The notes under the pieces: generated by a model
The model's input: the letters and a program-made list of their open reading frames with translations, nothing else
Told to the model about the DNA's origin: nothing
Databases searched by the model: none
From: Styela clava
Lineage: Eukaryota
Assembly (NCBI RefSeq): GCF_964204865.1
Contig: NC_135264.1
Span: 13,888,001-13,952,000, forward strand
Direction: 5' to 3'
DNA length: 64,000 nt
Part shown: one piece after another, positions 1,241 to 19,800 of the stretch
Numbering within the stretch: the first letter of the stretch is position 1
Layout: every line of letters starts with the position of its first letter
Made by a program: the position numbers and the translations under genes

Positions 1241-1823
1241 ATCTACGTTATATACTTCTGATACTATCTAGAAAAATTCAGTGGTCCCAAATACATAGCA
1301 TCAAAAAATCATAATCAGGAACACTGCTTAGCTTACAGAATATTAATGTTAATTATATTAAAAAAGCGCTATTAGGTTACCCTACATTATCTCTATTATT
1401 ATGGACGAAGTATTACTCATTCTTCATTACACAAAATTTGTTGAGTAACGTTATGTTACATTTTCAGCGCTCTTAGACCATTATTTTTTATAACAATAAG
1501 AATATTTTTCTTGGGGCTGATTAATAAAACTAAGCATAAGAAAATATCAGAAAAAAAAATTCAGAATTGAATGAAACGTTCGATAAAAATATCTTGAAAA
1601 TAAAGTACCGGTAATCGTTTGTTGTTGATTGAATAGCAGTGATTTGAAGTCTTTCCAAACTTAATTCGTTAATTTTATTTTAGTATTTGCTTTCTCAAAA
1701 AACAAACAAATTTTTTTCACAATATCCTGTTATACTATAAAAACTATCCAGAATATTAATAAAGCCAAAAATTGTTAAAAATAATATCGCCTAAAAAAAT
1801 TTGAATTTACAAGTAAAACTTAC

Positions 1824-4800
1824 CATGAAATTTTACTCTTCTGTTCTGTTCTTGTGAGCTCAAACTGAGAGGGCTGGGTCCATTGTGCGTATGTCTACGT
1901 GAACGGTTGGGGCTCGGTAACCCTGTGTGCCCGCAAAGCAAAAATTAGTACAATTCACCAACATAAAAAACGGGGTTAGTGTACCACATTAACCACCAGG
2001 AAATCACAAAAATACATTATTGGGGAGGCCGATCAAAATAAAAAAATAAGAATCATGAATAGCAAAACCCAATTCTAACAAACAGATAAGTAAGCTACAA
2101 ATTTATAATAATATATTTTAAATAACTTGCCAAAAAGAAATCACTATTATACTTTATGTGCACCTCAAAAAATAAAATTGCCTTCAATTATAACATGGAA
2201 TTTTGAGAATTTTTAATCAAGATATAAGAAGGAACAAAGAAAATTAATCAAATAGCAATATCTTGGGATATTTTAGAATGGATTTGCACGTTAGTGAGAC
2301 AAATCTAGTTATATATTAGGAACAGAAAAAACCCAATACCGTCCGCTTCTTATTGAGTTTAACACCAGTTTGCAATAAAAAAAAAACACTAAAAAATCTT
2401 ATAAAAGTCATTATAAACTAACACTGCATTACTTTTTCTTCACAATACAAACAATTGGGTGAATTCCAATATTAATTTTTTTTACAACCATATCCGTGAT
2501 TGCGTTTAGCATAGCGATGTCATTGCATTATTTTTATGATAATAGTTAGTTCACAGACGGAATACGATATAATATGGATCTCCGTATTGCTGGACTTATT
2601 TATGATTATCACTATGGAATATGGACATAACACTGCACCACAGTTGTCCTAATTTATAGCGATGTAATAGTATGCTTTTATACCAAAGAAAACTTAACAA
2701 ATGGGACAATTTGTATATTTTGAGAATTATGGATAACAAATTTATTCACAGGATCTGTTCAGATAGGAGTTTTTATTCAATGAAATATGAATGGAAAACC
2801 TAAATAAGTGACATTGAAAATTTTTTGGAATAAAAACGGCAAATTATTTTAGATTTTTCATTTAAACAGATAAAACAATTTTTCGAAGTCAGAGTTCATC
2901 CAAGGTCACAAATTCTTGAGCATCTTCGTACATTGGCCAGACATTGAACAAATATGACATCTATCTTCCATACTTGATTGGTAAATAACTTGCGAGGCAG
3001 ACCCAAAACAATTTCAGTCACGTATTGTTTATAAAGCCTTAACGCAAACGAGAGTATGCATGACTAAATTATTGGGAGAAATGTGATTATGGAAAGTAAA
3101 AAACGCACGAATTGTTGCAAGGAAAGCCTGATTTAATGGTGCACAAACAATAGTGCCATATACAAACAAAAAAACTTTTATTAGGAAATTCACGATTTCT
3201 TGGGCTCAGTAATTCCTATGCCATGTTACATAATTATAATAACAAAAAAGGTATACAAAAAATTGGGCAAAAATAATTGAGAATTTTGAACTAGACAAAC
3301 AATATTAATTGAAGTCAGTTCAAAAAACTAATCAATCAATTTAGGCAGCAGATATTCTATCAAAGAGTATTGAGAAAAGGACTTCTGTCAAGAAGAGTCT
3401 GACAAAAAATTGATTACAATCATACCACCAATCAGACAAAAAGATAGATCGAACAAAGGCAAAAAATAAGTTTAACTCCTATCAAGCTTGGAACAATATA
3501 AATAGACATGGTTATAGTAATCGAAACATTTCATGAACCTGCAAGATGACATGATTTTTCGTTTCATATGAACTCTGTAAGAATTTCATCCTAGACGACT
3601 GAAACGAAAGTGAAACTACGCTATTCAAAGTCATAATAAAACAGTGCTTACAGGATTTTCTTCTTGCTCAGACATGGTACGACTTCTCTCGGAGTGAGCG
3701 AGTTAAATAAAAAATTTCTCTTTTGGACACTTGAAGAAGCATCATAATCATGAATTTCTTTTTTCATAGTCATTAATAAATAATTATAGTTATTATTATG
3801 ACTATTTTGGAGCAGATTAAAAAAAAAATTTTCTCTTCTCAATTATAAAATTATTATTTTTTTTATTCTGACCAAAAGCACTACCACTAAGAACTCAAAC
3901 TCTGAGGGCTAAATAATGTCTTTTATGACTATAGCATCTTGTTTAACTATTTATAAAATGTAAAAATTTTCTTGGAATTTTTAAAATATTTAGCCCATGT
4001 GTATATCTGGAATTTCTTCCACTTTGCGTATCAAAACATTATTAAATATGCAAATGCAAATAGCTACTCATTTCAAAGGATTTGGATGTCTAGTAAATGC
4101 TAAAAAATACTAACCTTTAACCTTATTTCTTAAGCTTCGTCTCGTCTCTTTTCTTGGAACATCCTGATCGGAAAATACTTTCTGTTTTCCTTTCTTACAA
4201 CTATTTCTCTGGCAGGAACAGCTACTAATATCAACTGGTTCTTTGTGACAATCATCAACATTTTCTTCATGACTTCCTTCTGAGAGTCTCTCTATTCCAT
4301 TAGCACAATTTAGAACTGCACTACGTAATTTAGTTCTCTCAATTTTTTTCCTTGTATAACTGTTCTCCTCTTCTAATATAGAGTCTAGTTCTTTCAAAAT
4401 TCTACGAATTCTGACTGAAATACTACAACTGGTATCTTTCTCCATCGTGTTGTCTGCTAAAAAATATTGAGTCAACTATACAACCTCAGATTATCTTTCT
4501 ATTTGAAATTTAGAAAAAAAACTTTCCCAATGATAGATAAATATATTTCAAAGAAATTTGCTCAATGTAAGATCGACCCCCTTTACTTAAAAAGCAAATC
4601 ACTGTATTAGAAAAAGTTAATTCAATTCCTAAATTAAATTTGAACACCGTATACATACAGATTGTTTTGAATCCAACTTTACCTATTGCACAATATTACC
4701 ATAATGAGTGTACATAATAGTAATAAAAAACCACACACAAAAGCCACTTTGGTTGGTAAATATTAGGACAAATGGCACATTATCACCAATAAGAGTAAAG

Positions 4801-7800
4801 TAACTCTGACACCAATACGATTTAAGAGAGCTGATTTCAGTGAGTCAGTTTGGATGAGTGATTTCGAAAACTTAACAGCACCCAATCAAATAATAGTAAA
4901 GGCAGAGATAAAATCAAACAAATCACATATATACCGGTAGATGAAAATGGACCTAATCGAATAACTTTTGACATTATTTGGTGCTACTGTAGCGAGTCTA
5001 GGTCTACCACCGCATAGAGCGAGATGTAACTCAAGATAGCACTTTAGCGTGGGATTTACTTCCCTAATAAAACCCTTTGCTTCTATGCATTTAATTTAGC
5101 AATAAACACTTAATTTGTACATATTTTTGAAATAACTTGGTAATTTTAACTATTATAACGGTATACCTCATAGCCTACTGCATTTGGATAGCCAATATAT
5201 GGTAGTTGTAGTAACGCTATAGCATCCTCCCCTTAGTTTAATATTACAGGTACCAAAATCTTAGGTAATATGAATTCTAATATAATATAAGGACTAAAAA
5301 ATTAAAAAATTAAGACAATAAAACTATGTATTTATGAATGAACCAACTTCAGTAATCAAGAAAAAATCACAATATAAATAATATAATGATTTATTGTATC
5401 ACAAAATCAATCGATAAAATCTGAAAAATTTAAAATCAAATTCTCAAAAAATTGTTGTGGACTTTTCTACATACAATACACAATATAGCCAATACATTCC
5501 CATGCAGTGGACAAGCCTTCTAGGCATTGCTAAAGATTCACTACACCATGCACACATGCGACAAGTGCATTACAAAACAACCCACTACGTTATAAGAAAG
5601 TTTCTAAGTTGCTACGTTATAATGAACTTAAAAAGAGCCACCCCACGATAAGGCAAAATATTCGAATATCAAATGGAATATTGTAATGGCTTTCAGTTTC
5701 AACTATTCAAATATCTGATAACAAGTCAATTTACTTTGACATGGCACTGGAGCTAACATGAGCGAAAGCGCAAGAATTTTCGCAAGACTCTCGCAAGCAG
5801 ACCGAAAGTGAAAAATCTAATATGGTAGTCGTCATCTTTATGATATGGTGTGTCCTTGTCTAATTTCATTGTCAATTTGATATCGTTTAAATTTGTTAAA
5901 AAGAAATAGCAAGCAAATTTAAAAACAAAAGTTTGCGATCAGTTTTGAGAATAATTCAGAAACATCAACAAATTTTGCCTACCCTAGAGATAATTTTTAT
6001 CAATTCAAAATAGGCTATATCGAACTACCAGTAGAAATAACAGCATTCAGGTATAGCTTGCATTAGAATGCGCGAATGATTCATCACCAGAAGAAAAAAA
6101 CAATTTTTTTTGAATCTATTCATAAATATTTTCAGTATATGAATGCATTGTCATTGAAATGGTATTATGGAACTCCATAAGCGCTCATGTGCATGAGTAA
6201 GGATGCCTATATACGGCAATTTAAAGATCTTCAGGACTAATATTAGTTTCTGAACTGTTTTTCCGCCATGTGCTTTTTTTCAATCTTGATTTTTACCACA
6301 AGTATAATATGCAATATACAGGGTGTCCATAAAGTCCCTTTACAATTTCAATTTTGTTATGAAGTCAGTTCTCAATACATATTAACCAGGTTTGTTATTT
6401 TTTAATCAGTAATTGTTTAATAAGTATTTTTTCTTCATTTAGGAGAACCAAAACAAAATATGGTATTGATAAATTCCCTTTGCAATTTTGAAATTTTTTA
6501 AAGACTTTATAGACATCCTATATTACGATATGAAGTGTAAGAAATAGTATTTACACCAAAAATTCCCTCAGTGTCAAATGCAATTCACTGTGACAAAGAA
6601 TCATACTAACTGATAAGAATAAAACAATGTCTCACCTCCTCCTATGTGTGGATTCATGTTTGATGCAGAATTGATATTCCCTGTACTTCTTGCTTGGTTA
6701 TAAAGCATAGAGGCAGGTGTTTGTAATGAACCTCCTTGCTGATTCTGAACAAATAGAGAAAACAACGATGAAGTGACAATAATATTACGATTTTTTCAAT
6801 TAATCAAGGAGACTAGAAACAAGGTTTCTAAGATTGTGCCAGGGTAGTTTGCCCCCTCAATAGGTTGGCAAATGAAACTGAAAATTCATAAAAAATTTCG
6901 CATTTCAAGACTACTAAAGCCAAATTAACTAATCCAAATGCATACTAAATAATATTATTATACATGTAATGCAAAATATATTGTATATTAGAATATGGTC
7001 AACAAATAATTTGGAATGTATTTGAATATTAGATTCATATTAGACAACTCCTTTCAGCTTGGCCCATGCTTTGCTATGAGTTTTTATAGAAAGATGGACT
7101 GAGTAATGTAATGCTATTTCGACTTTTTTCGAGATATCTAGCTCATCAGATCTTCATTGTTATCAAAATAATTTCAAAAACACGGACCATGAAGAATGTG
7201 AATCATCATTTGAGCAGCAAATATAAATATCTGTCCGATAAATAAATACGCAATTGGGAAAACAAGATGCAGTGCAGTGGCCAAATAGTCAAAATAGAAC
7301 ATGATACAACAATTAAAAGCAAAAAAGAAATATATTATGTCAGGCCTCTTCAAATCATTCTTTAGTAAAAAAGTATTATGATGGAGAAGTCCAGAATAAA
7401 GAAATTAAATCTAATCAATTGTATCTGATATTTATACTTTTTAAATGGTCAACTTAGCAGCACAAATAGCAACATTCTGGGACAGATCGAAATGGAACAG
7501 CCAAATTACACAATACTATAAAGAGACATTTTTTTCTAAACCTTTATAACACATATGTATATTCAATACACATTCAATATTTAAATGCTCTAGTTTCAGT
7601 ATATTGTCTTTGGAATCAAAATAATTTCAATTCATATTAAAAGTCAGATTACGGTAAGTTCAACTTTCACATATATCGCTAATATAAACATAGATAAATA
7701 AATATACCTGAGGCATTTGTTTTTGCTGTTCATCATAATCAATTGGATTTGGCAAAGGAGATGGAATATGGAGATTTGTTAAATCTGAAAGAAGTCAAAT

Positions 7801-10800
7801 ATAGTTAGTTAAGCATTAATTTCTTCAATTTAAAATACCATGTATATGGAAGATTGCTCTTAAAGTGAATCAAAAAGAGGAGAGTTAATGAGAGAGTAAT
7901 TAAACCACAGACACATTGACAAATTAACTTTACAAAGTAGAAACTTAAATCAAACTGCTGATAAAGTTAAGTACATAATCAGTCTCACATCAGTCAGTGA
8001 ACCACCAACTTTTATAATATGGACATGAAACTAGCTACCAGTCAGACGTTGAAGACAATACTGTGTATGCCAGCCTTCTTTGATAGAATATTAGGCATGC
8101 ATAGTTAGCTCAATTTTTTTCTATTTCTGTATCAGGACTTTGATCATTGAAACCAATAAAAATGTGAAATTCCGACTCCTAGGTAATCCAGACTCTGGAT
8201 AATTCAAAATTTTGAGTCCGACTGAAATTGGCCAAATTGCCAAACTCTGCCTACACAGCCCTGGTCTGCTCATCAGATCTTCATTATTATCAAGATTATT
8301 TCAAAAACACGGACCATGAAGATATAAGTTCATCATTTGAGCAAATAGAAGGTGATTTTGGAATCATATTATGACAGGGCATGTATTTACTGGAGTTGGA
8401 CCAGGAGTCGTATTTTCAAACTCCCAGAGATAAAGTCGAAATCCTGAATTCCCCAAAGTCAAAATCTCAGGCATCTAACGGTGATAAAGAATGATTGAAT
8501 GATAATTTCATATGACAAAATTTTTTCAAAATTAGATCTTCTCGGAGTTCAAAGTCAAAATTTTGTACAACCAGGAGTTGATTAGAATTTTACGAATCCC
8601 AGTTTGCAATATAGAACATAATTAAAAAATAACAAACATTTCGGTTATGAACCAGTGTAAATGTACTGATATTTCACTTGTAATTCATTCCTCAATGGTC
8701 ATGTTAATTAAGCGTTTTACCTGGCAAAGATCCTGTGTTATTTCCGATCTGAGTAACGTGTGATAGTCCTGGTTGGTTGGTTGGTGTTGGTGGCATTCCT
8801 TGCCTGTGGTTTGTACATTCCGCTGTGTTTTGTAGAACACTGAAAACAAGTAAAGGAATAAGTAATCATTGCTATGATAGGCCATGGTATCAACCAGTTT
8901 TGACCAGTTTCCAAAAGTTTGGTTGAAACCAGAATTTACCGAATTCGTTAAACAATGTTATGGAATTGCTGTGGCCCAAACCCACAACGTATAATTATTG
9001 TAAGAAGGTTGCATTGGGTTAAATCCTGAGCAGAGGAACTTCAGTAAAGCTGATTCCCAACTGTTTGCTCATCAGATCTTCAATATTATCAAGTAATTTC
9101 AAAAACACGGACCATGAAGATAGAGATTCATCATTTGAGCGGATGCAGACGACTCGGGAATTCAAATAATAGAATTTCTGAGTAAATCCTTAGAGATTGT
9201 TTTGAATATGATATATCGGATATCGAATATTTGAAGTAAACATTGTTTTTGTTAACGGTTGAATGAAGTCAATTTTAATGCTTATATTAATATACTTTCA
9301 TATGAAAATATTCTAATTTATTCCCAAATCATAAATTACTTTATCAAACATATCTGAATATTTGATTCGTTTTGGACCTCCCTGGGTCCAGGTATGTCAA
9401 ATTTTGGATTAATTTCTATGAATTTCAAAAGTGTTCAAATATTCGAGTTTTTTTTAGACATCCCCGTAACTTTTTCACAGCATGTAACGCATAGTAGATT
9501 AGTAGGTATACATTTATTACAGCATTTTTCTACAAATGAGGTGCCTCATCATGGGCCATATTTTTAGCGAGTACCTTCAGGCACAATGAGAACTAGCATA
9601 GTGTATTTCCGGTCTGGACAATAGAAAGTAAATAAGTACTCCAAAGTCTGTAACTAATACTTAGGCATATTTACGTTCTGTGGTATTTAGCTGGCTTTAT
9701 CAGATTAAATATTTATTGATGACGTTTAGTTTCGTCATGATGACTATTTAAGGAGTGTCAATAACATTTATGCGCTAAAAATAGAACCCACAAACTTATT
9801 GAAATGCGCATTTTGAGCGGGAAAAAAAACTTCATAGAAAAAATTTCCACCTCACAGGCGACACGAAATGGGAAATTGTATTTAAATTTGCATTTAATAA
9901 CGATATTTGCTGAAATCGTGACATGAAATATTCCTTACCACGAAAACATACTCAAAAGTTCGTAGAAAAATAATATAAACAATAGTAAACATATGTTTAA
10001 TTATAAGTAGGCGGTAGATTCGAATTACTAGTAGAGGTTCAGATAATCTTAATTGTTTTCGTAAATTATATACTCCTTTATATCTTGAAGCTATTCTTCT
10101 TTTAATTCTATAACAGGAAATTTTTACATTTACAATCATTATTATACTCATTTTATTCCGCATTAATTAAAATTGCCAAGTGCAAAAGGAGAGGTACCGG
10201 TAGCTAAATGCATTTATCAGTTGGGGTTACACAAGACTCCCATCCTTCTGCTGTGTCATTAGTGGATTGTATGCATATATTACGAAGATGCTGTAGTAGG
10301 AAAAAAGATGACTATACTATTAAATTTATTAGGAATCTTGTTGTAAACTTCTTGTCCAAGGAAAGACGTTATAAAAATACATTTGTGTTAGTGTGCAGCA
10401 AGACTCTACACATACTATCAATACATTTATGATGTGTAAATATGAAGTCCAAATAACTCACCCCATATGAGAATCTTCACATGATTTAGGTCCATTAGGA
10501 GCTTGTAAATGTTGATGAAATTTCTCAGCATCCAGAACTGATTTAGACATCGATGTATCCATCAAATCTGAAGAAATGATCGAAATTTGTGTCAAATATA
10601 TAAATGTGTTGATGAGAATAAATGAACATAATTGCTGACCCTCCATACAGGGTTACATAAAACACTGCTTTCCAAAACTACAATACATAACACATGTTGA
10701 GATTTTAGCACTTTTCCGCCCTTCCCACCCAAGGAGAAGAAAATTGATATAATGACTTAATCACATAGTAAACCACATACTTTAATTTGGTTGTAAGTCC

Positions 10801-13800
10801 AAGTTGGATATGTAAATGCTTATTATTCCAAATACATAGACTTTTGAGTTGACTAAATTTTGTAGCCGCAAAAATGAAATTTCTAAATACTATTGTAGCA
10901 AGGTAGCCAATCCATTGGGATGTTAGTACCTGTACTGGCAATAAAATATCGTTTCATCATCGATACATATTAAGTAGATAAGATTCGGCCCTGCCAAACA
11001 CAGCTTAATATTATTAAGGCTGCTTGCTCCTTTTCATAAACATCATAAACGAAATTTTTTTTTGATGAAAGACTTGAAAAGTGTACATATGAATCCTTTT
11101 GCTAAATTGTTGTTAATTGAAAAAAATCATTTTCAACTATTGGACCAATTGATTTCAATTTTTCAGTTATCCGTACTTAATAGGCCACCATAAGACTGAT
11201 TACTCTTATTTCTTCAAATTTCTCTGAACAGTATTCATGGCCTATGGAAAGGAAACTCTTCATTTTGTTATGCTTGTCTACTGAGCTTTTGAACAAAATC
11301 TGTGCTCAGGTAATGCCTTAGAGCAGAGTTCCCAAACTTTTCCTTGTTTGTTTATCTTATTTTTGACGGACCCCCCAAGGGTCAACCTGTATTTTGTCAT
11401 CCTATTGGTAAGAGCTGAAAATGCTGCCTAATACATGTGTGTCATTACAAAAAGCAATAAAATTTTATTGTCTTCACTGACAGCAATTGATACCAGGATT
11501 CGCCCACAACCAAAAAGACCCAATGGCTTTTTGATTAGAATCAATCATTAAAAATCGATCAGACTCTTTTCATATTGTTGCGCACTCCTGGTGCAGTCAT
11601 CACGAACCCCAGTTTGGGAGACCCTGCCTTAGAGTACCAGCGTGCAACCTTCGTGTCCACATATTTTGAGCATTGCTCTCTCGTTTAAAAATAAAATTCA
11701 ATTCACCTCTTCTGGGTTGTTGAGGCATCGCTGATAAATGTCCAGGAACATTGTTGAAATTGGAGAAAGGTGCTTGCGAGTTTGGATTCATCACACTCTG
11801 ATGTAACGCTGAATCCGAGTTCGTCCTAGACAGGGCAAAACTATCGTTTCACACATGCCCATATAGAGGTTTACGGGGGTTGGGGGCGTGGTCAGGATGG
11901 AGCGGGTGGGGTCACAATAGGTTAGTAAGCAATGTATAGTTATTTTAAATTGAGGGTCAAAGGTCGAATTAAGGATAATTTTTTCATAAAAGTTTAAGAC
12001 AATTTACCACAATAAAATGTATTTATATTATAATAACACAAATGCATGTTGCGACATTTAAAATCAAAACACAGAATATGTGATCCGTTTAAAATTAGAT
12101 TAAACATGCAAATTTTTGAATTTAATAAAAAACAAAAAATTGACCAATTTTAAGTAATTATTTCACATTTGTTTTTTGAGTTGGAATAGTCATCAAATTA
12201 TGATAACATCAATTTAGTATTTGACAAAACAATTATAAATCAGCCACCAGAGTTAGTTCAAACAAAAACGTTTAACAACAAATACAAAGCATGATGTAAA
12301 TGGTTCGTGGAATTAAGACATTACGAGCAAAATTATGTGACCGAATGAATTTTGACAAGGGTGAGACAGGGTTGGTGACCAGGTGGGTGATAATTAGGGG
12401 TGCAGGTTTGCAAGCGGGTGCAGGTACGGGCAGGCAATGATGACGACACGCAAAATAGAAAGCAAAATAAAGCATGTGTAAGTTAGATTGTAAAATTAAG
12501 CAAGCAAAACAATCATATTAAACTACCAACGAACTACAAGCATTCACTACACAACTAAATAGAAGTGATGTCCAGATATGCATTTAGCATAATAAAAAAT
12601 TTGGATTAAAAAATACTGCAAATTCATATTTATAACCATGATAATGAATTTTTGAAATTTAAAAATAACCAAACTGATAAAATTGTGGTAATTTTAGAAA
12701 TTCAATAACTGTTTTGAGTTCTAGAATATTGTGCTAGACAAATTTGCAATCTTGCGACAATAATATTTTGTACGCTCTGGCATATATTCTTCAATAACAC
12801 AAAATAAATTTAGAATCGAAATCGAAAATGATGATTATCAGAAAGCTATATCAACAACCAATGACTACATAACATGAAACATTAATCTGATTTTCCGAAA
12901 GATGGTAACAGCCCTAATAATCATGCAAAAGAAACCACTGGACAAAACTGCTATAAAGCAAATAAACATTAATAAACACTATATTGATTTTCTACTACTA
13001 TTTAGTATATAGCTTTAGTATATACAGAATCACCATTCCGTCTTAATTGAACATAGATTTGGAATCAACTTGTGTAAGAAAGATACCTGTGTATAGGAAG
13101 AAAGTGAACTCTAAAGATATATTAATAGTTTTTTGCATTTTTTCAAGTTTGAAACAATTAAAAACATACTATATAATATCTAGTAAATAAGATTGTAATT
13201 TAATTGATATATTGTTTGAATTTGTCATACCTTTTTATGTTCCATTATTACAAGACACAATACTAGTAAAATCAATAAAATTGTTTACATAACGATTACT
13301 GTATAAAATAGAATTTATGGTGATTAGGAAAATGCTGAGTGCACAAATAAAGCATTTATGTATCAATATTCTATGAGAATGTGCAAACAATACTGCATAC
13401 AAGAATAGGGAAAGAATGTTCGTCAACTCTTGATCCGGTAAAAATTTATCCTATAGTTTAGTACTGCAAAATTTTTGGTCCCCTTTTTGAGAACGATTTA
13501 GCGAATTTTGTTTCAAGGAGATTCGAGCAACTTCAGTGAAAATATGTTGACAGCTAGTTTTAGCCTATTCAATCCAAGCTTTTTCATTTATTCTGAAGAA
13601 GAATTTATCCTAAAACTTTGATTTATATTTATATTCATGAGACATGACTGAGACTGCAAAATGAAAGTCAAAGTCAATTTCATTTTATAAATTATATGCA
13701 GTACTTCTAATACAAATAGCGTTATTTTAGCCAATACTTAATTAACAATCAACATTTAACAAAGCGGGCTATATTACAATTTTGTTGCAAATAGATACAT

Positions 13801-16800: not shown

Positions 16801-19800
16801 ATTAAATGTTATATTCCAGATCTAAATGATTAAATATTTTATAATACTTTGTTGTATTAATCAATTTGGTGTAATAAAAGTTAACTTTACAATATGAAAA
16901 GTTGATAACTTGACACAGAGAAATTTGGAAATTTCCTCAACTGAAATGTCACATAATTCTATAATAATATATGTGACAATGATATTCCTTAGGAATCCAA
17001 TTTTTGTTACTGATTTTGAATTTAGAATGGCTTAGGACTGCAGTATTGAACTGAATCATATAAGTGATGAGAACATGTTGTAACACACGTATGAATGATA
17101 CAACGTAATTTAGATGTGTAAATGCGAACGGACAAAAAAATTAACTTGATAAATTATATTTAAACTTGATTCACTTCAAAGATTAAGAAGGTAAATCTGT
17201 TTTCCAATAAAATTTTAGTGCTTTTTTATGACGATTTTGGAGAAAAAAAACAAACAACATTTAGGCTATTTGGAATCAAAATTAATTGCAATGTTGAATT
17301 TAAAAAAAAACATCTATTCTGATTCATAGACGAAACACAAACACGCTAATAGTTCCAAGTAACATTGCCAAAAAGCCTCCATACAATGTTTGAAAGAAAA
17401 TCAACAACTTCTATTGCTATCAAAGTTGCTCACATTAAAATCTATCACTAATGTCATGTTAGATACCTCAACATAAAATAATTAGGTTACACCATAATTT
17501 GGCTTTGCTAACTTTAAAAAACATTCGAAGGATTTGATATTACTTTCGAATTTAAAATAAAAACACTGACATTTAATTACTACTACAATTTATACCTGGA
17601 CAAAACTGCTAGCCATAATTTTTATGATTTTCATTATACAGTTCAACAACAAAGAAACACGAACTTAAACAAATTATTTCAAATCAAGACTGAAATTAAC
17701 ACAAGCATATTCAATTAACTCTACATACAATAATGTTATGTTGTGACTACGATTATACAACTACAAGACTAGCAAGCAGATGAAACTGATCAAATGCCAA
17801 AGCAATCTACGTATGAATACAATACAATTACTACATGTACCTTCTCCAACTGGTATCGGCAGGAGGTGACAAATAGGGCCCGCTATACGGCCCACCGGGC
17901 ATTCCTTCAACGTGACGAGGATGTCGGTTCTGAAAATCTGGCCTCCTATACGGCCTTGGACGAGAGTCAAAGCGCACTTGGTGGCGCATATGTGGTGGCT
18001 TAAAATCCTCATACATGCCCTGAAAAAAATCATAAAACAGAAAATTGAAACTATAAATCAGAATAATGTACTAGCATGCAAGTCATCTCACAAGATGCAA
18101 CCTATTGTCAACCACTTCATATAAAATTTGTGAATTGAACAGACTTTTGAACTGAATTTTCTCCCAATTTGAAGACACTATATGTTTTGTGTTGAGCATA
18201 TATCCAATTTCCACAAAGCATTACAATAATGATAATATCTGCCATTTTACAATCTATAAATTCTCTATCGAATTCTCTGATATTACTCGACCCTGTTGTT
18301 TATTTGTAACAAATATGAGCTAATTGTTAGTTACTCTAGCTGAAAAATAGTTCTAGGATCAATTTCCTGAATCTCACTCCTGCAAACTTTATAGAAGAGT
18401 ACATGCTTGGTCTGGTCTATTACAATTTGATCAATTTGAAAATGAAATCAGTAAATCGTGACTTTCCAGAACAACACCATGTTAACCAAACACAGTGATG
18501 ATGTCAATCACGCTTCATTGATTAAAAGTTAAAATGAGTTAAAACTAATTCAAGAAGATTGACCTATACCTTAACATCAAATGTCCAGTCACAAAAAAAT
18601 GAGAACTTCTGACTTACCTGTCGCATCTGCATTTCCATCGGTGGTCCAGACATTTGATTAACATTTGGTAAAGATCCTCCAAGATATGAAGGCCTGAGAA
18701 ATGCTTGTGGATGGGGATGGAGACGTTGAGGTTGCTGAAAAGCAAAGAGGTCACATGATTAAATAGTTGGGAATTGTAAAACCATGCCCAAGATCTGCAA
18801 AGACTGTGCGATATTTGCCATTATAATATTATGACATGTAGTGGTAGTCGTTTTTAAATTGCACATATTTCCAGTTTATTGTGAAGCTCTATTTCGCGTT
18901 TTTTGCAATAAATTGAGAGACCATGGCAGTCTAGTAATAAATGGATTCTAATACATTGTTATAACTGCCGTCATGAAACTTTAAAATGTCAAACAAAACA
19001 ACAAAACGAATCGTGAAAATCCTACACACTATTAAGTGCGTATTTAATAGTTATTATTAGCTGTTGAGTAGCTCCCCAGGTTCAAGTAAAATATATCTAT
19101 GAATAATGAAAAAATACAACATTTGTCCCTAAAACGAGGACATTTGGGTACAGTGGCAAATCTTCAAGATATCATTATGTTTGCAGCAATAAGTATCTCT
19201 ACGGACAATGAATGTTATGCGAACGAAACTAATTCTCATCGATCGTTTCTTGATCACAGAGGTAATTTTTTCCCTGTGGAACATATCGAAAATTTAATTG
19301 CGACATTTTAAGATTTCAGCTAATTGTTTTTGCTAAAGATCTTGAACGCTACGGTAATTTTTTTTCAAGGAATCTAACGGTGACGTTTATAGACTTCTTT
19401 TCCTTTCAGTTTATTGTGCAGTACCAATTTGAAAATTTGTGGCGATATGGAGGCTCCACACTGTCTCCTAAAGAAAGATAGGGTTTGCATCCACTGTTAT
19501 AATTATTGTCTTCAAATATAGGGGTTATTGTTACGTACTGAATGAGTTTTTTTTAGTCTATTGCACAATACCAGATTGCTGATTTTGTTACGATATGGAT
19601 AGGTACATGTTGCCAGACTGTCCTGCAAAGAAGGGGTTTGTATTCATCATTATATTGAATGTCTGAAATATAGGGGTTATTATCAGAATAAAAGAATAGT
19701 GCTATCCTGTATTGTGCGGGTATATTTCATGATTTCCATGACAATGTGCAATCCCAGAATCTTTCAGTTTTGTAAGTAGTGTAATGGGTTGAACAATTGC

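What the first reader, a model, noticed from the sequence alone, without database searches (positions are those of the whole stretch)
11826..11842. Tandem 3' splice sites rewrite the CRTC inhibitory phospho-site (CRTC1-like versus CRTC2/3-like)
Two AGs lie 15 nt apart: ...CGATAG|TTTTGCCCTGTCTAG|GACGAAC. The downstream AG gives [11 protein letters not shown], as in vertebrate CRTC1. The upstream AG is in frame and gives [16 protein letters not shown], placing Leu at -5. That creates the LxRxxSxxxL AMPK/SIK consensus and resembles the ALNRT(S/N)SDSALH context of CRTC2/CRTC3. One gene could thus generate by splicing the two kinase-site variants that vertebrates split between paralogues. The upstream AG is also the first AG after the 680-nt AG-free zone, which a scanning mechanism would favour.
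Basis: partly seen in the sequence, partly recalled or inferred. Interest (0 to 1): 0.8.

Follow-up and report, generated by a model that had tools for sequence, protein, structure and literature searches.

The report
Two-acceptor splice switch at CRTC phosphosite
In the sea squirt Styela clava, the single CRTC gene uses two splice acceptors 15 bases apart, making two proteins that differ in five residues just before the main inhibitory phosphoserine; all tunicates sampled share this switch, which mimics the CRTC1 versus CRTC2/3 difference of vertebrates.

Summary
On the minus strand two AGs (11842-41 and 11827-26) lie 15 nt apart and in frame, at the end of a 682-nt AG-free stretch. They sit at the 5' edge of the CRTC exon that encodes RTNSDSALH.

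Transcript contigs from three studies show both acceptors joined to exon 3. RefSeq already lists both products for Styela clava: X1 reads [11 protein letters not shown] and X2 reads WRRTNS.

The insert is conserved in frame across tunicates (Ciona, Clavelina, Phallusia and three unnamed relatives). Phe -7, Leu -5 and Ser -4 are invariant.

The long form fits the SIK/AMPK consensus LxB(S/T)xSxxxL and reads [12 protein letters not shown], close to ALNRT(N/S)SDSALH of CRTC3/CRTC2. The short form is the CRTC1 and general invertebrate context.

Shark and teleost CRTC3 are also annotated with and without a 21-22-aa insert at the same junction. So is a snail CRTC (12 aa, ending SLS).

The effect on phosphorylation is inferred, not tested. 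The isoforms are known to databases, but I found no paper on their meaning. Relatives' genomic DNA could not be fetched.

The parts
17841..18019 (-). CRTC exon 3, ending ...PPADTSW-R-(AG|). The intron falls after the second base of a codon.
   Evidence: Sequence. Its translation is an exact substring of XP_039257991 (P0003). The loose ends of the RNA contigs equal its last 30 nt.
11843..12523 (-). AG-free stretch at the 3' end of intron 3 (681 nt without any AG on the gene strand).
   Evidence: largest gap in the window (682 against 152), 0 of 20000 shuffles. None of 10 polymorphisms seen in the runs creates an AG.
11921..11927 (-). TACTAAC, a perfect branch-site-like heptamer. Its A at 11922 lies 81 nt from the upstream AG and 96 nt from the downstream AG. 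A C-rich pyrimidine tract follows (about 11915-11862).
   Evidence: Its use as a branch point was not tested.
11841..11842 (-). Upstream 3' splice site AG (long form). It is the first AG after the AG-free stretch and has a weak adjacent pyrimidine tract (7 of 20 Y, gaaacgaTAG).
   Evidence: In one search the main contigs of X1 and X5 run 11707-11842 and then continue into exon-3 letters. X7 has a 60-nt contig and X9 two contigs showing the same junction.
11826..11840 (-). 15-nt alternative segment TTTTGCCCTGTCTAG. It codes (S)FALS(R) in the long form and serves as the polypyrimidine tract plus AG of the downstream acceptor in the short form.
   Evidence: The long-form protein is P0003 and the short-form protein is P0151.
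11826..11827 (-). Downstream 3' splice site AG (short form, WRRTNS), preceded by 13 of 20 Y.
   Evidence: In one search the X7 main contig ends at 11827 followed by 15 exon-3 letters, and an X9 contig stops at the 11827 fork. RefSeq isoform X2 is P0151.
11707..11825 (-). Core of exon 4: (R)[39 protein letters not shown].
   Evidence: The joint 10567/11707 appears in all four runs. TORC_M match. Translation.
11816..11818 (-). TCG codon of the conserved phospho-acceptor serine: Ser143 in the long form and Ser138 in the short form, equivalent to CRTC1 Ser151, CRTC2 Ser171 and CRTC3 Ser162.
   Evidence: Equivalence rests on the motif in PMC8057676 Table 2. Phosphorylation in Styela was not tested.

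Best explanation
This is a genuine alternative tandem 3' splice site, conserved in tunicates, in the only CRTC gene of Styela clava.

Shown: intron 3 ends in two usable AGs 15 nt apart. Splicing to the first adds S-F-A-L-S, and splicing to the second gives the ancestral W-R-R-T-N-S. Both mRNAs occur in several independent RNA data sets. The same in-frame insert of 5 or 6 residues, with invariant Phe -7, Leu -5 and Ser -4, occurs together with the short form in other tunicates.

Inferred: the 15 nt has two jobs. It is the pyrimidine tract of the downstream acceptor, and it codes the residues at -4 to -8 of the main inhibitory phosphosite. The long form replaces Trp -5 / Arg -4 by Leu -5 / Ser -4. 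That completes the AMPK-related-kinase (SIK, MARK, AMPK) consensus LxRTxSxxxL, as in vertebrate CRTC2 and CRTC3. The short form keeps the CRTC1-type WRRTNS. The ratio of the two acceptors would therefore set how readily the CRTC pool is phosphorylated, bound by 14-3-3 and kept out of the nucleus.

The long AG-free stretch and the distant branch-like site fit a regulated choice between the first AG reached from the branch point and the AG with the better pyrimidine tract.
For: Spliced joints with GT..AG ends at four downstream introns prove the contigs are cDNA. X1 (2422-nt contig) and X5 (978 nt) read through 11842 into the last 30 nt of exon 3, which is the long form. The X7 main contig (2308 nt) reads from 11827 into exon 3, which is the short form, and X7 also has a long-form contig of depth 18.2 against 47.7 for the main contig. 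X9 shows the long form twice and a fork at 11827. The runs come from three studies.

Public proteins: Styela X1 is 645 aa (long) and X2 is 640 aa (short).

Conservation: Ciona X1 has SFALS and X2 is short. Clavelina has SSFALS, SFALS and short forms. Phallusia has SFPLS. Unnamed relatives have SRFTLS and short forms. These seven form one clade with 100/100 support. W, R, S, F, L, S, R, T, N, S are invariant columns.

The consensus and the vertebrate contexts are in PMC8057676. In 127 vertebrate CRTC2/3-type sequences the insert ends [AQST]-L-[NS].

Outside tunicates and vertebrates, 49 of 52 isoform entries read WRRTNS.
Against: No biochemical evidence exists for either isoform. CRTC1 Ser151, with Trp at -5, is itself an accepted SIK site, so the short form is not a non-substrate.

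F, A, L and S are what a pyrimidine-rich tract encodes in this frame (TTT GCC CTG TCT). Part of the conservation could therefore reflect the splice signal rather than the protein.

Contigs give presence, not proportions, so tissue or stage regulation is unknown.

The DNA of the acceptor region in other tunicates could not be examined.
Confidence: 0.65

Rival explanations
1. Both isoforms are made, but they are functionally equivalent. The upstream AG is tolerated because the pyrimidine tract of the ancestral acceptor happens to be in frame and free of stops. The conserved residues reflect constraint on the splice signal, not on the protein.
For: The 15 nt is 12/15 pyrimidine and ends in TAG. 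It is the only pyrimidine tract close to the downstream AG. F, L, S, P, A and T are the residues that Y-rich codons give, and they are the ones seen at the variable positions (SFALS, SFPLS, SRFTLS). CRTC1-type WRRTNS is a working SIK site.
Against: Leu -5 and Phe -7 are invariant in seven tunicate sequences across a deep clade, while length varies between 5, 6 and 14 aa, always in frame. A pure pyrimidine tract could encode F, L, S or P at any of these positions. The vertebrate and snail inserts are built differently, yet also end in L-[SN]-R-T.
Confidence: 0.2
2. The switch matters, but not through SIK/AMPK recognition at -5. The long form loses Arg -4 (RRxxS becomes SRxxS) and gains Ser residues at -4 and -8. 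It might change recognition by other basophilic kinases, by 14-3-3 or by a phosphatase, or add a priming site.
For: The short form has two arginines at -4 and -3 and the long form only one. The inserted Ser -4 is as invariant as Leu -5 in tunicates, and vertebrates have S or N there.
Against: This rests on sequence only. The one published consensus that the long form completes and the short form does not is the AMPK-related one.
Confidence: 0.12
3. Use of one of the two AGs is splicing noise or an assembly or annotation artefact.
For: The reads tool gave only assembled contigs, which cannot give proportions. Gnomon isoforms are predictions.
Against: The long form is the main contig in X1 and X5, and the short form is the main contig in X7, where the long-form contig has about 40 % of the depth. 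Both forms recur in three studies and in four or more species.
Confidence: 0.03

Closest known systems
Vertebrate CRTC1 Ser151 site ([13 protein letters not shown])
   Same: The short form is identical over [15 protein letters not shown]. The same context is found in echinoderms, a hemichordate, arthropods and molluscs.
   Different: More than 200 vertebrate CRTC1-type sequences were inspected and none carries an insert at this junction. The tunicate gene also makes a long form.
Vertebrate CRTC2 Ser171 and CRTC3 Ser162 sites (ALNRT(S/N)-S*-DSALHT)
   Same: The long form reads [14 protein letters not shown], with Ala -6, Leu -5, Arg -3, Thr -2 and Leu +4 as in CRTC2/3. Shark CRTC3 reads SALSRTNS. 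The insert sits at exactly the same junction, after W-R.
   Different: The vertebrate insert is 20-25 aa (..PW..EEK.PGFRL.S.LN) and is probably a separate cassette exon. That is inferred from three automatic gene models that lose the Arg on both sides of it. The tunicate insert is 5-6 aa made by an acceptor shift. Whether the two share ancestry or converged is open. CRTC2 and CRTC3 are sisters, with CRTC1 outside them, so one gain plus one loss and two independent gains are equally parsimonious.
Tandem alternative acceptors (NAGNAG and related 'subtle' splice events; TassDB, PMC1669710, PMC2878309, PMC3250501)
   Same: Two AGs a few nucleotides apart at one intron end, both used, in frame and conserved. 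Clavelina adds a true NAGNAG-type third form (SSFALS against SFALS).
   Different: The spacing is 15 nt rather than 3, outside the 2-12 nt range used in TassDB2. The inserted peptide lands on the recognition residues of a known regulatory phosphosite.
AG-exclusion zones with distant branch points upstream of alternatively spliced exons (from my own knowledge of the splicing literature; not checked in a paper here)
   Same: A long AG-free stretch precedes an alternatively spliced acceptor. A consensus branch-like site lies 81-96 nt upstream.
   Different: 682 nt is far longer than the branch-point distance requires. No branch point was mapped.

Membership tests
CRTC / TORC coactivator family | N-terminal CREB-binding domain (Pfam TORC_N, PF12884) | tested here: met
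   77.8 bits (cut-off 25) at window 20839-20732. It is the single match in the genome.
CRTC / TORC coactivator family | Middle domain starting at RTNSDSALH (Pfam TORC_M, PF12885) | tested here: met
   34.4 bits (cut-off 27) at window 11827-11753. It is the single match in the genome.
CRTC / TORC coactivator family | C-terminal transactivation domain (Pfam TORC_C, PF12886) | tested here: inconclusive
   no six-frame match, but nothing matched in the tool's 14 control genomes either. The precomputed Pfam entry for P0003 lists only PF12884 and PF12885. The tunicate C-termini align with each other.
Alternative tandem 3' splice site | Two AGs close together at one intron end, in frame with each other | tested here: met
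   AGs at 11842-41 and 11827-26, 15 nt apart, with no stop between them.
Alternative tandem 3' splice site | Both AGs joined to the same upstream donor in RNA | tested here: met
   contigs continue from 11842 (X1, X5, X7, X9) and from 11827 (X7) into the last letters of exon 3. The match to 17843-17872 was verified.
Alternative tandem 3' splice site | Event conserved in related species | tested here: met
   long and short protein isoforms occur in Styela, Ciona, Clavelina and an unnamed relative.
AMPK-related kinase (SIK) substrate motif LxB(S/T)xSxxxL | Leu -5, basic -3, Ser/Thr -2 and Leu +4 around the serine | tested here: met
   The long form [10 protein letters not shown] fits at all four positions. 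The short form [10 protein letters not shown] fits at all but -5.
AMPK-related kinase (SIK) substrate motif LxB(S/T)xSxxxL | Actual phosphorylation by SIK/AMPK and 14-3-3 binding | not testable with these tools
   This needs kinase assays on both peptides or proteins.
Vertebrate CRTC2/3-type insert | 20-25-aa segment ..PW..E(E/K)K.(P)G.(F)RL.S.L[NS] between WRR and RT(N/S)S | tested here: not met
   Tunicate inserts are 5-6 aa (one is 14 aa). Only the last residues, [A/P/T]-L-S, correspond. The long form works like a CRTC2/3 context but is not shown to be the same insert.

The most novel reading that the evidence does not exclude
An alternatively spliced insert placed exactly before the RTNS phosphosite, which swaps Trp -5 for Leu -5, is an old switch. 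It would predate the split of tunicates and vertebrates, and possibly be older, given the snail Pomacea (..GVSLS-RTNS) and the acorn worm Glandiceps. After the vertebrate genome duplications it was partitioned: CRTC1 fixed the short form, CRTC2 fixed the long form, and CRTC3 of sharks and teleosts still makes both. The different kinase sensitivity of the mammalian paralogues would then be a frozen splicing choice.
Probability: 0.3. Interest if true: 0.75.

Novelty: new member of a known kind. Interest (0 to 1): 0.58.

Why it matters
CRTCs are the cAMP- and calcium-sensitive coactivators of CREB. Whether they enter the nucleus is set largely by phosphorylation of this one serine by SIK/AMPK-family kinases.

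Mammals have three paralogues whose sites differ at the recognition residues. Why they differ, and whether it explains their different regulation, is not settled.

Here a single-copy chordate gene makes both contexts from 15 nucleotides. That gives a natural, minimal pair in Ciona and Styela, which are experimentally tractable, for testing what Leu against Trp at -5 does in vivo.

It is also a clean example of one short sequence serving both as a splice signal and as the coding sequence for kinase-recognition residues.

Tried and rejected
- **Metagenome contigs.** Two scans were run. The first found nothing. The second returned 80 loci, almost all first exons of other animals, and none holds a tunicate exon-4 boundary.
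- **TORC_C in the genome**: no match, uninformative.
- **A vertebrate-like cassette inside intron 3**: none found.
- **Papers on CRTC splice isoforms or CRTC in tunicates**: none found.
- **Junction spanning.** The intron is 6 kb and the reads tool takes at most 6000 letters on this genome, so the junction could not be spanned. I relied on the loose ends at the acceptor instead.
- **Joined spliced model.** I built and searched none. Exon 1 was searched by reference, and exons 3 and 4 were only compared as separate pieces. The full-length proteins used are those the tools returned.

Full report
**What is in the sequence**

The gene lies on the minus strand. Exon 3 (18019-17841) ends ...CCAGTTGGAGAAG|gtacat.

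About 6 kb downstream the intron ends ...gtgaaacgatAG|TTTTGCCCTGTCTAG|GACGAACTCGGATTCAGCGTTACATCAG. The two AGs are at 11842-41 and 11827-26, 15 nt apart.

The intron splits a codon after its second base. The downstream AG therefore gives [11 protein letters not shown], and the upstream AG gives [16 protein letters not shown], in frame and without a stop.

On the gene strand there is no AG between 12523 and 11843. This 682-nt gap compares with 152 nt for the next largest in the 64-kb window. About 24 AGs are expected from local composition, and 0 of 20000 shuffles lack AG.

The four downstream introns of the gene all end in TTCAG preceded by 13-17 pyrimidines in 20. The upstream AG here has only 7 in 20 (gaaacgaTAG). 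The downstream AG has 13 in 20, supplied by the 15-nt segment itself.

A perfect TACTAAC lies with its A at 11922, which is 81 nt from the first AG and 96 nt from the second. A C-rich tract follows it.

**What the gene is**

Six-frame Pfam searches of the whole 377-Mb assembly found one TORC_N match (77.8 bits, window 20839-20732). They also found one TORC_M match (34.4 bits). The TORC_M match starts exactly at the Arg codon formed by the downstream acceptor (11827-11753). These single matches point to a single-copy CRTC gene.

A search with exon 1 alone (collected) returned a 645-aa protein that contains the window's exons 3 and 4 exactly. The cluster look-up names it XP_039257991, 'CREB-regulated transcription coactivator 1-like isoform X1 [Styela clava]'. 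The window is therefore from the ascidian Styela clava.

**Are both acceptors used?**

Thirteen public runs hold the exon. I laid four of them, from three studies, on 6650-12600.

All four runs show joints with GT..AG ends on the gene strand at four downstream introns: 11707/10567, 10462/8839, 8721/7784 and 7708/6744. The contigs are therefore cDNA.

The intron is 6 kb and the tool is limited to 6000 letters here, so the junction itself could not be spanned. I read the loose ends instead.

- **X1 and X5.** The main contigs (2422 nt and 978 nt) cover 11707-11842 and then continue with TCTCCAACTGGTATC(G/A)GCAGGAGGTGACAA. This is the plus-strand sequence of 17843-17872, the end of exon 3. These contigs carry the long form.
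- **X7.** The main contig (2308 nt, depth 47.7) stops matching at 11827 and continues with 15 letters of exon 3. This is the short form. A separate 60-nt contig (depth 18.2) covers 11798-11842. This is the long form.
- **X9.** Two contigs leave at 11842 into exon-3 letters, and an 81-nt contig stops at the 11827 fork.

The contigs break 15 letters into exon 3 because of a synonymous G/A polymorphism at 17858 (GCC/GCT, Ala).

Contigs cannot give proportions. Still, each form is the main path in some run, and in X7 the long-specific contig has roughly 40 % of the gene's depth. Neither form is therefore rare.

RefSeq agrees: isoform X1 (645 aa) has [11 protein letters not shown] and X2 (640 aa) has WRRTNS.

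**Conservation**

A word search with the Styela protein, two cluster look-ups and inspection of the sequences gave the following.

| Species | Forms found |
|---|---|
| Ciona intestinalis | X1 [11 protein letters not shown]; X2 WRRTNS |
| Clavelina lepadiformis | WR-SSFALS-; WR-SFALS-; WRRTNS |
| Phallusia mammillata | WR-SFPLS- |
| Unnamed transcript sets (JGI, Logan) | WR-SRFTLS-; WRRTNS |
| One further unnamed model | WR-SSSLFHSNNRFTLS- |

In an alignment of seven long forms the columns W R S. F. [12 protein letters not shown] are invariant, against a mean column identity of 50 %.

In a maximum-likelihood tree the seven sequences form one clade with 100/100 support. The three unnamed ones branch outside the group of the four named species. 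I did not test whether that group represents the three classical ascidian orders.

The insert length is 5, 6 or 14 residues and is always in frame.

Conservation is therefore shown at the protein level only.

**Comparison with vertebrates and other animals**

Table 2 of the SIK review PMC8057676 lists three sites:

- CRTC1 Ser151: [13 protein letters not shown]
- CRTC2 Ser171: ALNRTS-S*-DSALHT
- CRTC3 Ser162: [13 protein letters not shown]

The Styela short form is the CRTC1 context to the letter. The long form, [14 protein letters not shown], has Ala -6, Leu -5, Arg -3, Thr -2 and Leu +4, and differs from CRTC3 only at -4 within [12 protein letters not shown].

A second word search, inspected, covered 127 vertebrate CRTC2/3-type sequences. 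They carry a 20-25-aa insert between WRR and RT(N/S)S that ends [AQST]-L-[NS]. None of more than 200 CRTC1-type sequences carries one.

Shark and teleost CRTC3 genes are themselves annotated both with and without the insert. Scyliorhinus, Pristiophorus and Mustelus X1 read WRR-SIPPWGSEEKPPGLRLISALS-RTNS and their X2 reads WRRTNS. Halichoeres X1 and X2 differ by 21 aa.

Three automatic gene models lose the Arg on both sides of the insert (WR|EQQ...QLN|TNS). This suggests that in vertebrates the insert is a separate cassette exon rather than an acceptor shift. That is an inference, since no genomic DNA was available.

Outside tunicates and vertebrates, 49 of 52 isoform entries read WRRTNS. They come from spiders, scorpions, a horseshoe crab, a termite, sea urchins, a cephalopod cluster, a vent snail and an acorn worm.

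There are three exceptions:

- Pomacea canaliculata X1 and X3: WRR-MYRYLNGVSLS-RTNS (12 aa, again Leu -5 and Ser -4).
- Glandiceps talaboti X4: WR-STWLHNSHDSIPRLLAV-RTNS (Leu at -6 and -7).

No amphioxus or lamprey protein appeared in the lists.

In the tree CRTC2 and CRTC3 are sisters and CRTC1 lies outside them. Two histories are therefore equally parsimonious: an ancestral switch lost in CRTC1, or independent gains in tunicates and in the CRTC2/3 ancestor.

**How it most likely works**

Shown: there are two acceptors, both are used, the event is conserved, and the two peptide contexts are as described.

Inferred: the segment TTTTGCCCTGTCTAG is at once the pyrimidine tract and AG of the ancestral acceptor and, when the first AG is used, the code for the residues at -8 to -4 of the phosphosite.

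The first AG is the first one reached from any branch point in the AG-free stretch, but it has a poor pyrimidine tract. The second AG has a good one. This is a plausible basis for balanced, adjustable use.

Earlier first-stage notes report other long AG-free stretches next to alternative exons in this genome. I did not check those notes.

The long form completes the AMPK-related-kinase consensus by replacing Trp -5 with Leu and Arg -4 with Ser. It should therefore be a CRTC2/3-like substrate, while the short form is CRTC1-like. The acceptor ratio would then tune phosphorylation, 14-3-3 retention and CREB coactivation.

The main rival is that the isoforms are equivalent and that the conserved F, L and S merely translate a pyrimidine tract. 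Against it stand three points:

- Leu -5 and Phe -7 are invariant across a deep clade.
- The frame is kept strictly despite length changes.
- L-[SN]-R-T recurs at the end of the differently built vertebrate and snail inserts.

A second rival is that the relevant change is the loss of Arg -4 or the gain of Ser -4, rather than Leu -5.

**Novelty**

The two isoforms are already in RefSeq for Styela, Ciona and Clavelina, so the splice event itself is known to databases. Five literature searches found no paper on CRTC isoforms at this site or on CRTC in tunicates.

Tandem acceptors as a class are well described (PMC1669710, PMC2878309, PMC3250501).

I therefore file this as a new member of a known kind. 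It has an interesting evolutionary reading that remains to be tested.

**Limits**

- Only assembled contigs were available for the RNA runs, so there are no counts, tissues or stages.
- No DNA of relatives was available.
- There is no biochemistry.
- I built and searched no joined spliced model from the window. Exons were handled one at a time, and the full-length proteins used were those returned by the tools.

Noticed in passing
window 11843-12523 (minus strand): A 681-nt stretch has no AG on the gene strand, against a next-largest gap of 152 nt in the window. Ten polymorphisms seen in the RNA/DNA contigs of four runs fall inside it, and none creates an AG.
   Followed up: partly
window 17858 and 11777: Two synonymous polymorphisms in the coding exons occur among public runs. 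17858 G/A on the plus strand changes Ala GCC to GCT, 16 nt from the exon-3 donor. 11777 C/T on the plus strand changes Ser TCG to TCA in exon 4. The first one breaks the assembly graphs next to the junction.
   Followed up: yes
window 10375-10407: A 32-nt piece inside the intron between exons 5 and 6 is covered by many short contigs at very high depth (about 140-460). Their flanks differ on both sides. It is a dispersed repeat or an abundant small RNA fragment.
   Followed up: no
window 11345-11610: Contigs from several runs enter this intronic stretch and leave it into unrelated sequence. A similar peptide-like frame recurs at 1158-1247. It looks like a transcribed dispersed repeat.
   Followed up: no
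window about 1822-1920 (minus strand): RefSeq isoform X3 (612 aa) skips a 33-aa exon, [33 protein letters not shown]. This exon holds the [11 protein letters not shown] block that is invariant in all seven tunicate CRTCs aligned. It is a second alternative event in the same gene.
   Followed up: no
proteins P0292, P0287, P0288 (Clavelina lepadiformis): Clavelina is annotated with three forms at this junction (SSFALS, SFALS, none). This amounts to a NAGNAG-type acceptor stacked on the 15-nt one.
   Followed up: partly
proteins P0552/P0553 (Pomacea canaliculata) and P0547 (Glandiceps talaboti): A snail and an acorn worm are annotated with alternative inserts at exactly the same junction. The snail insert is 12 aa ending GVSLS. 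The acorn-worm insert is 17 aa ending RLLAV. The snail insert again puts Leu at -5 and Ser at -4.
   Followed up: partly
whole gene / genome G000: Pfam TORC_C was not found by six-frame search, and it is not among the precomputed domains of the Styela, Ciona or Phallusia proteins. It is listed for Clavelina and for non-tunicate CRTCs.
   Followed up: no
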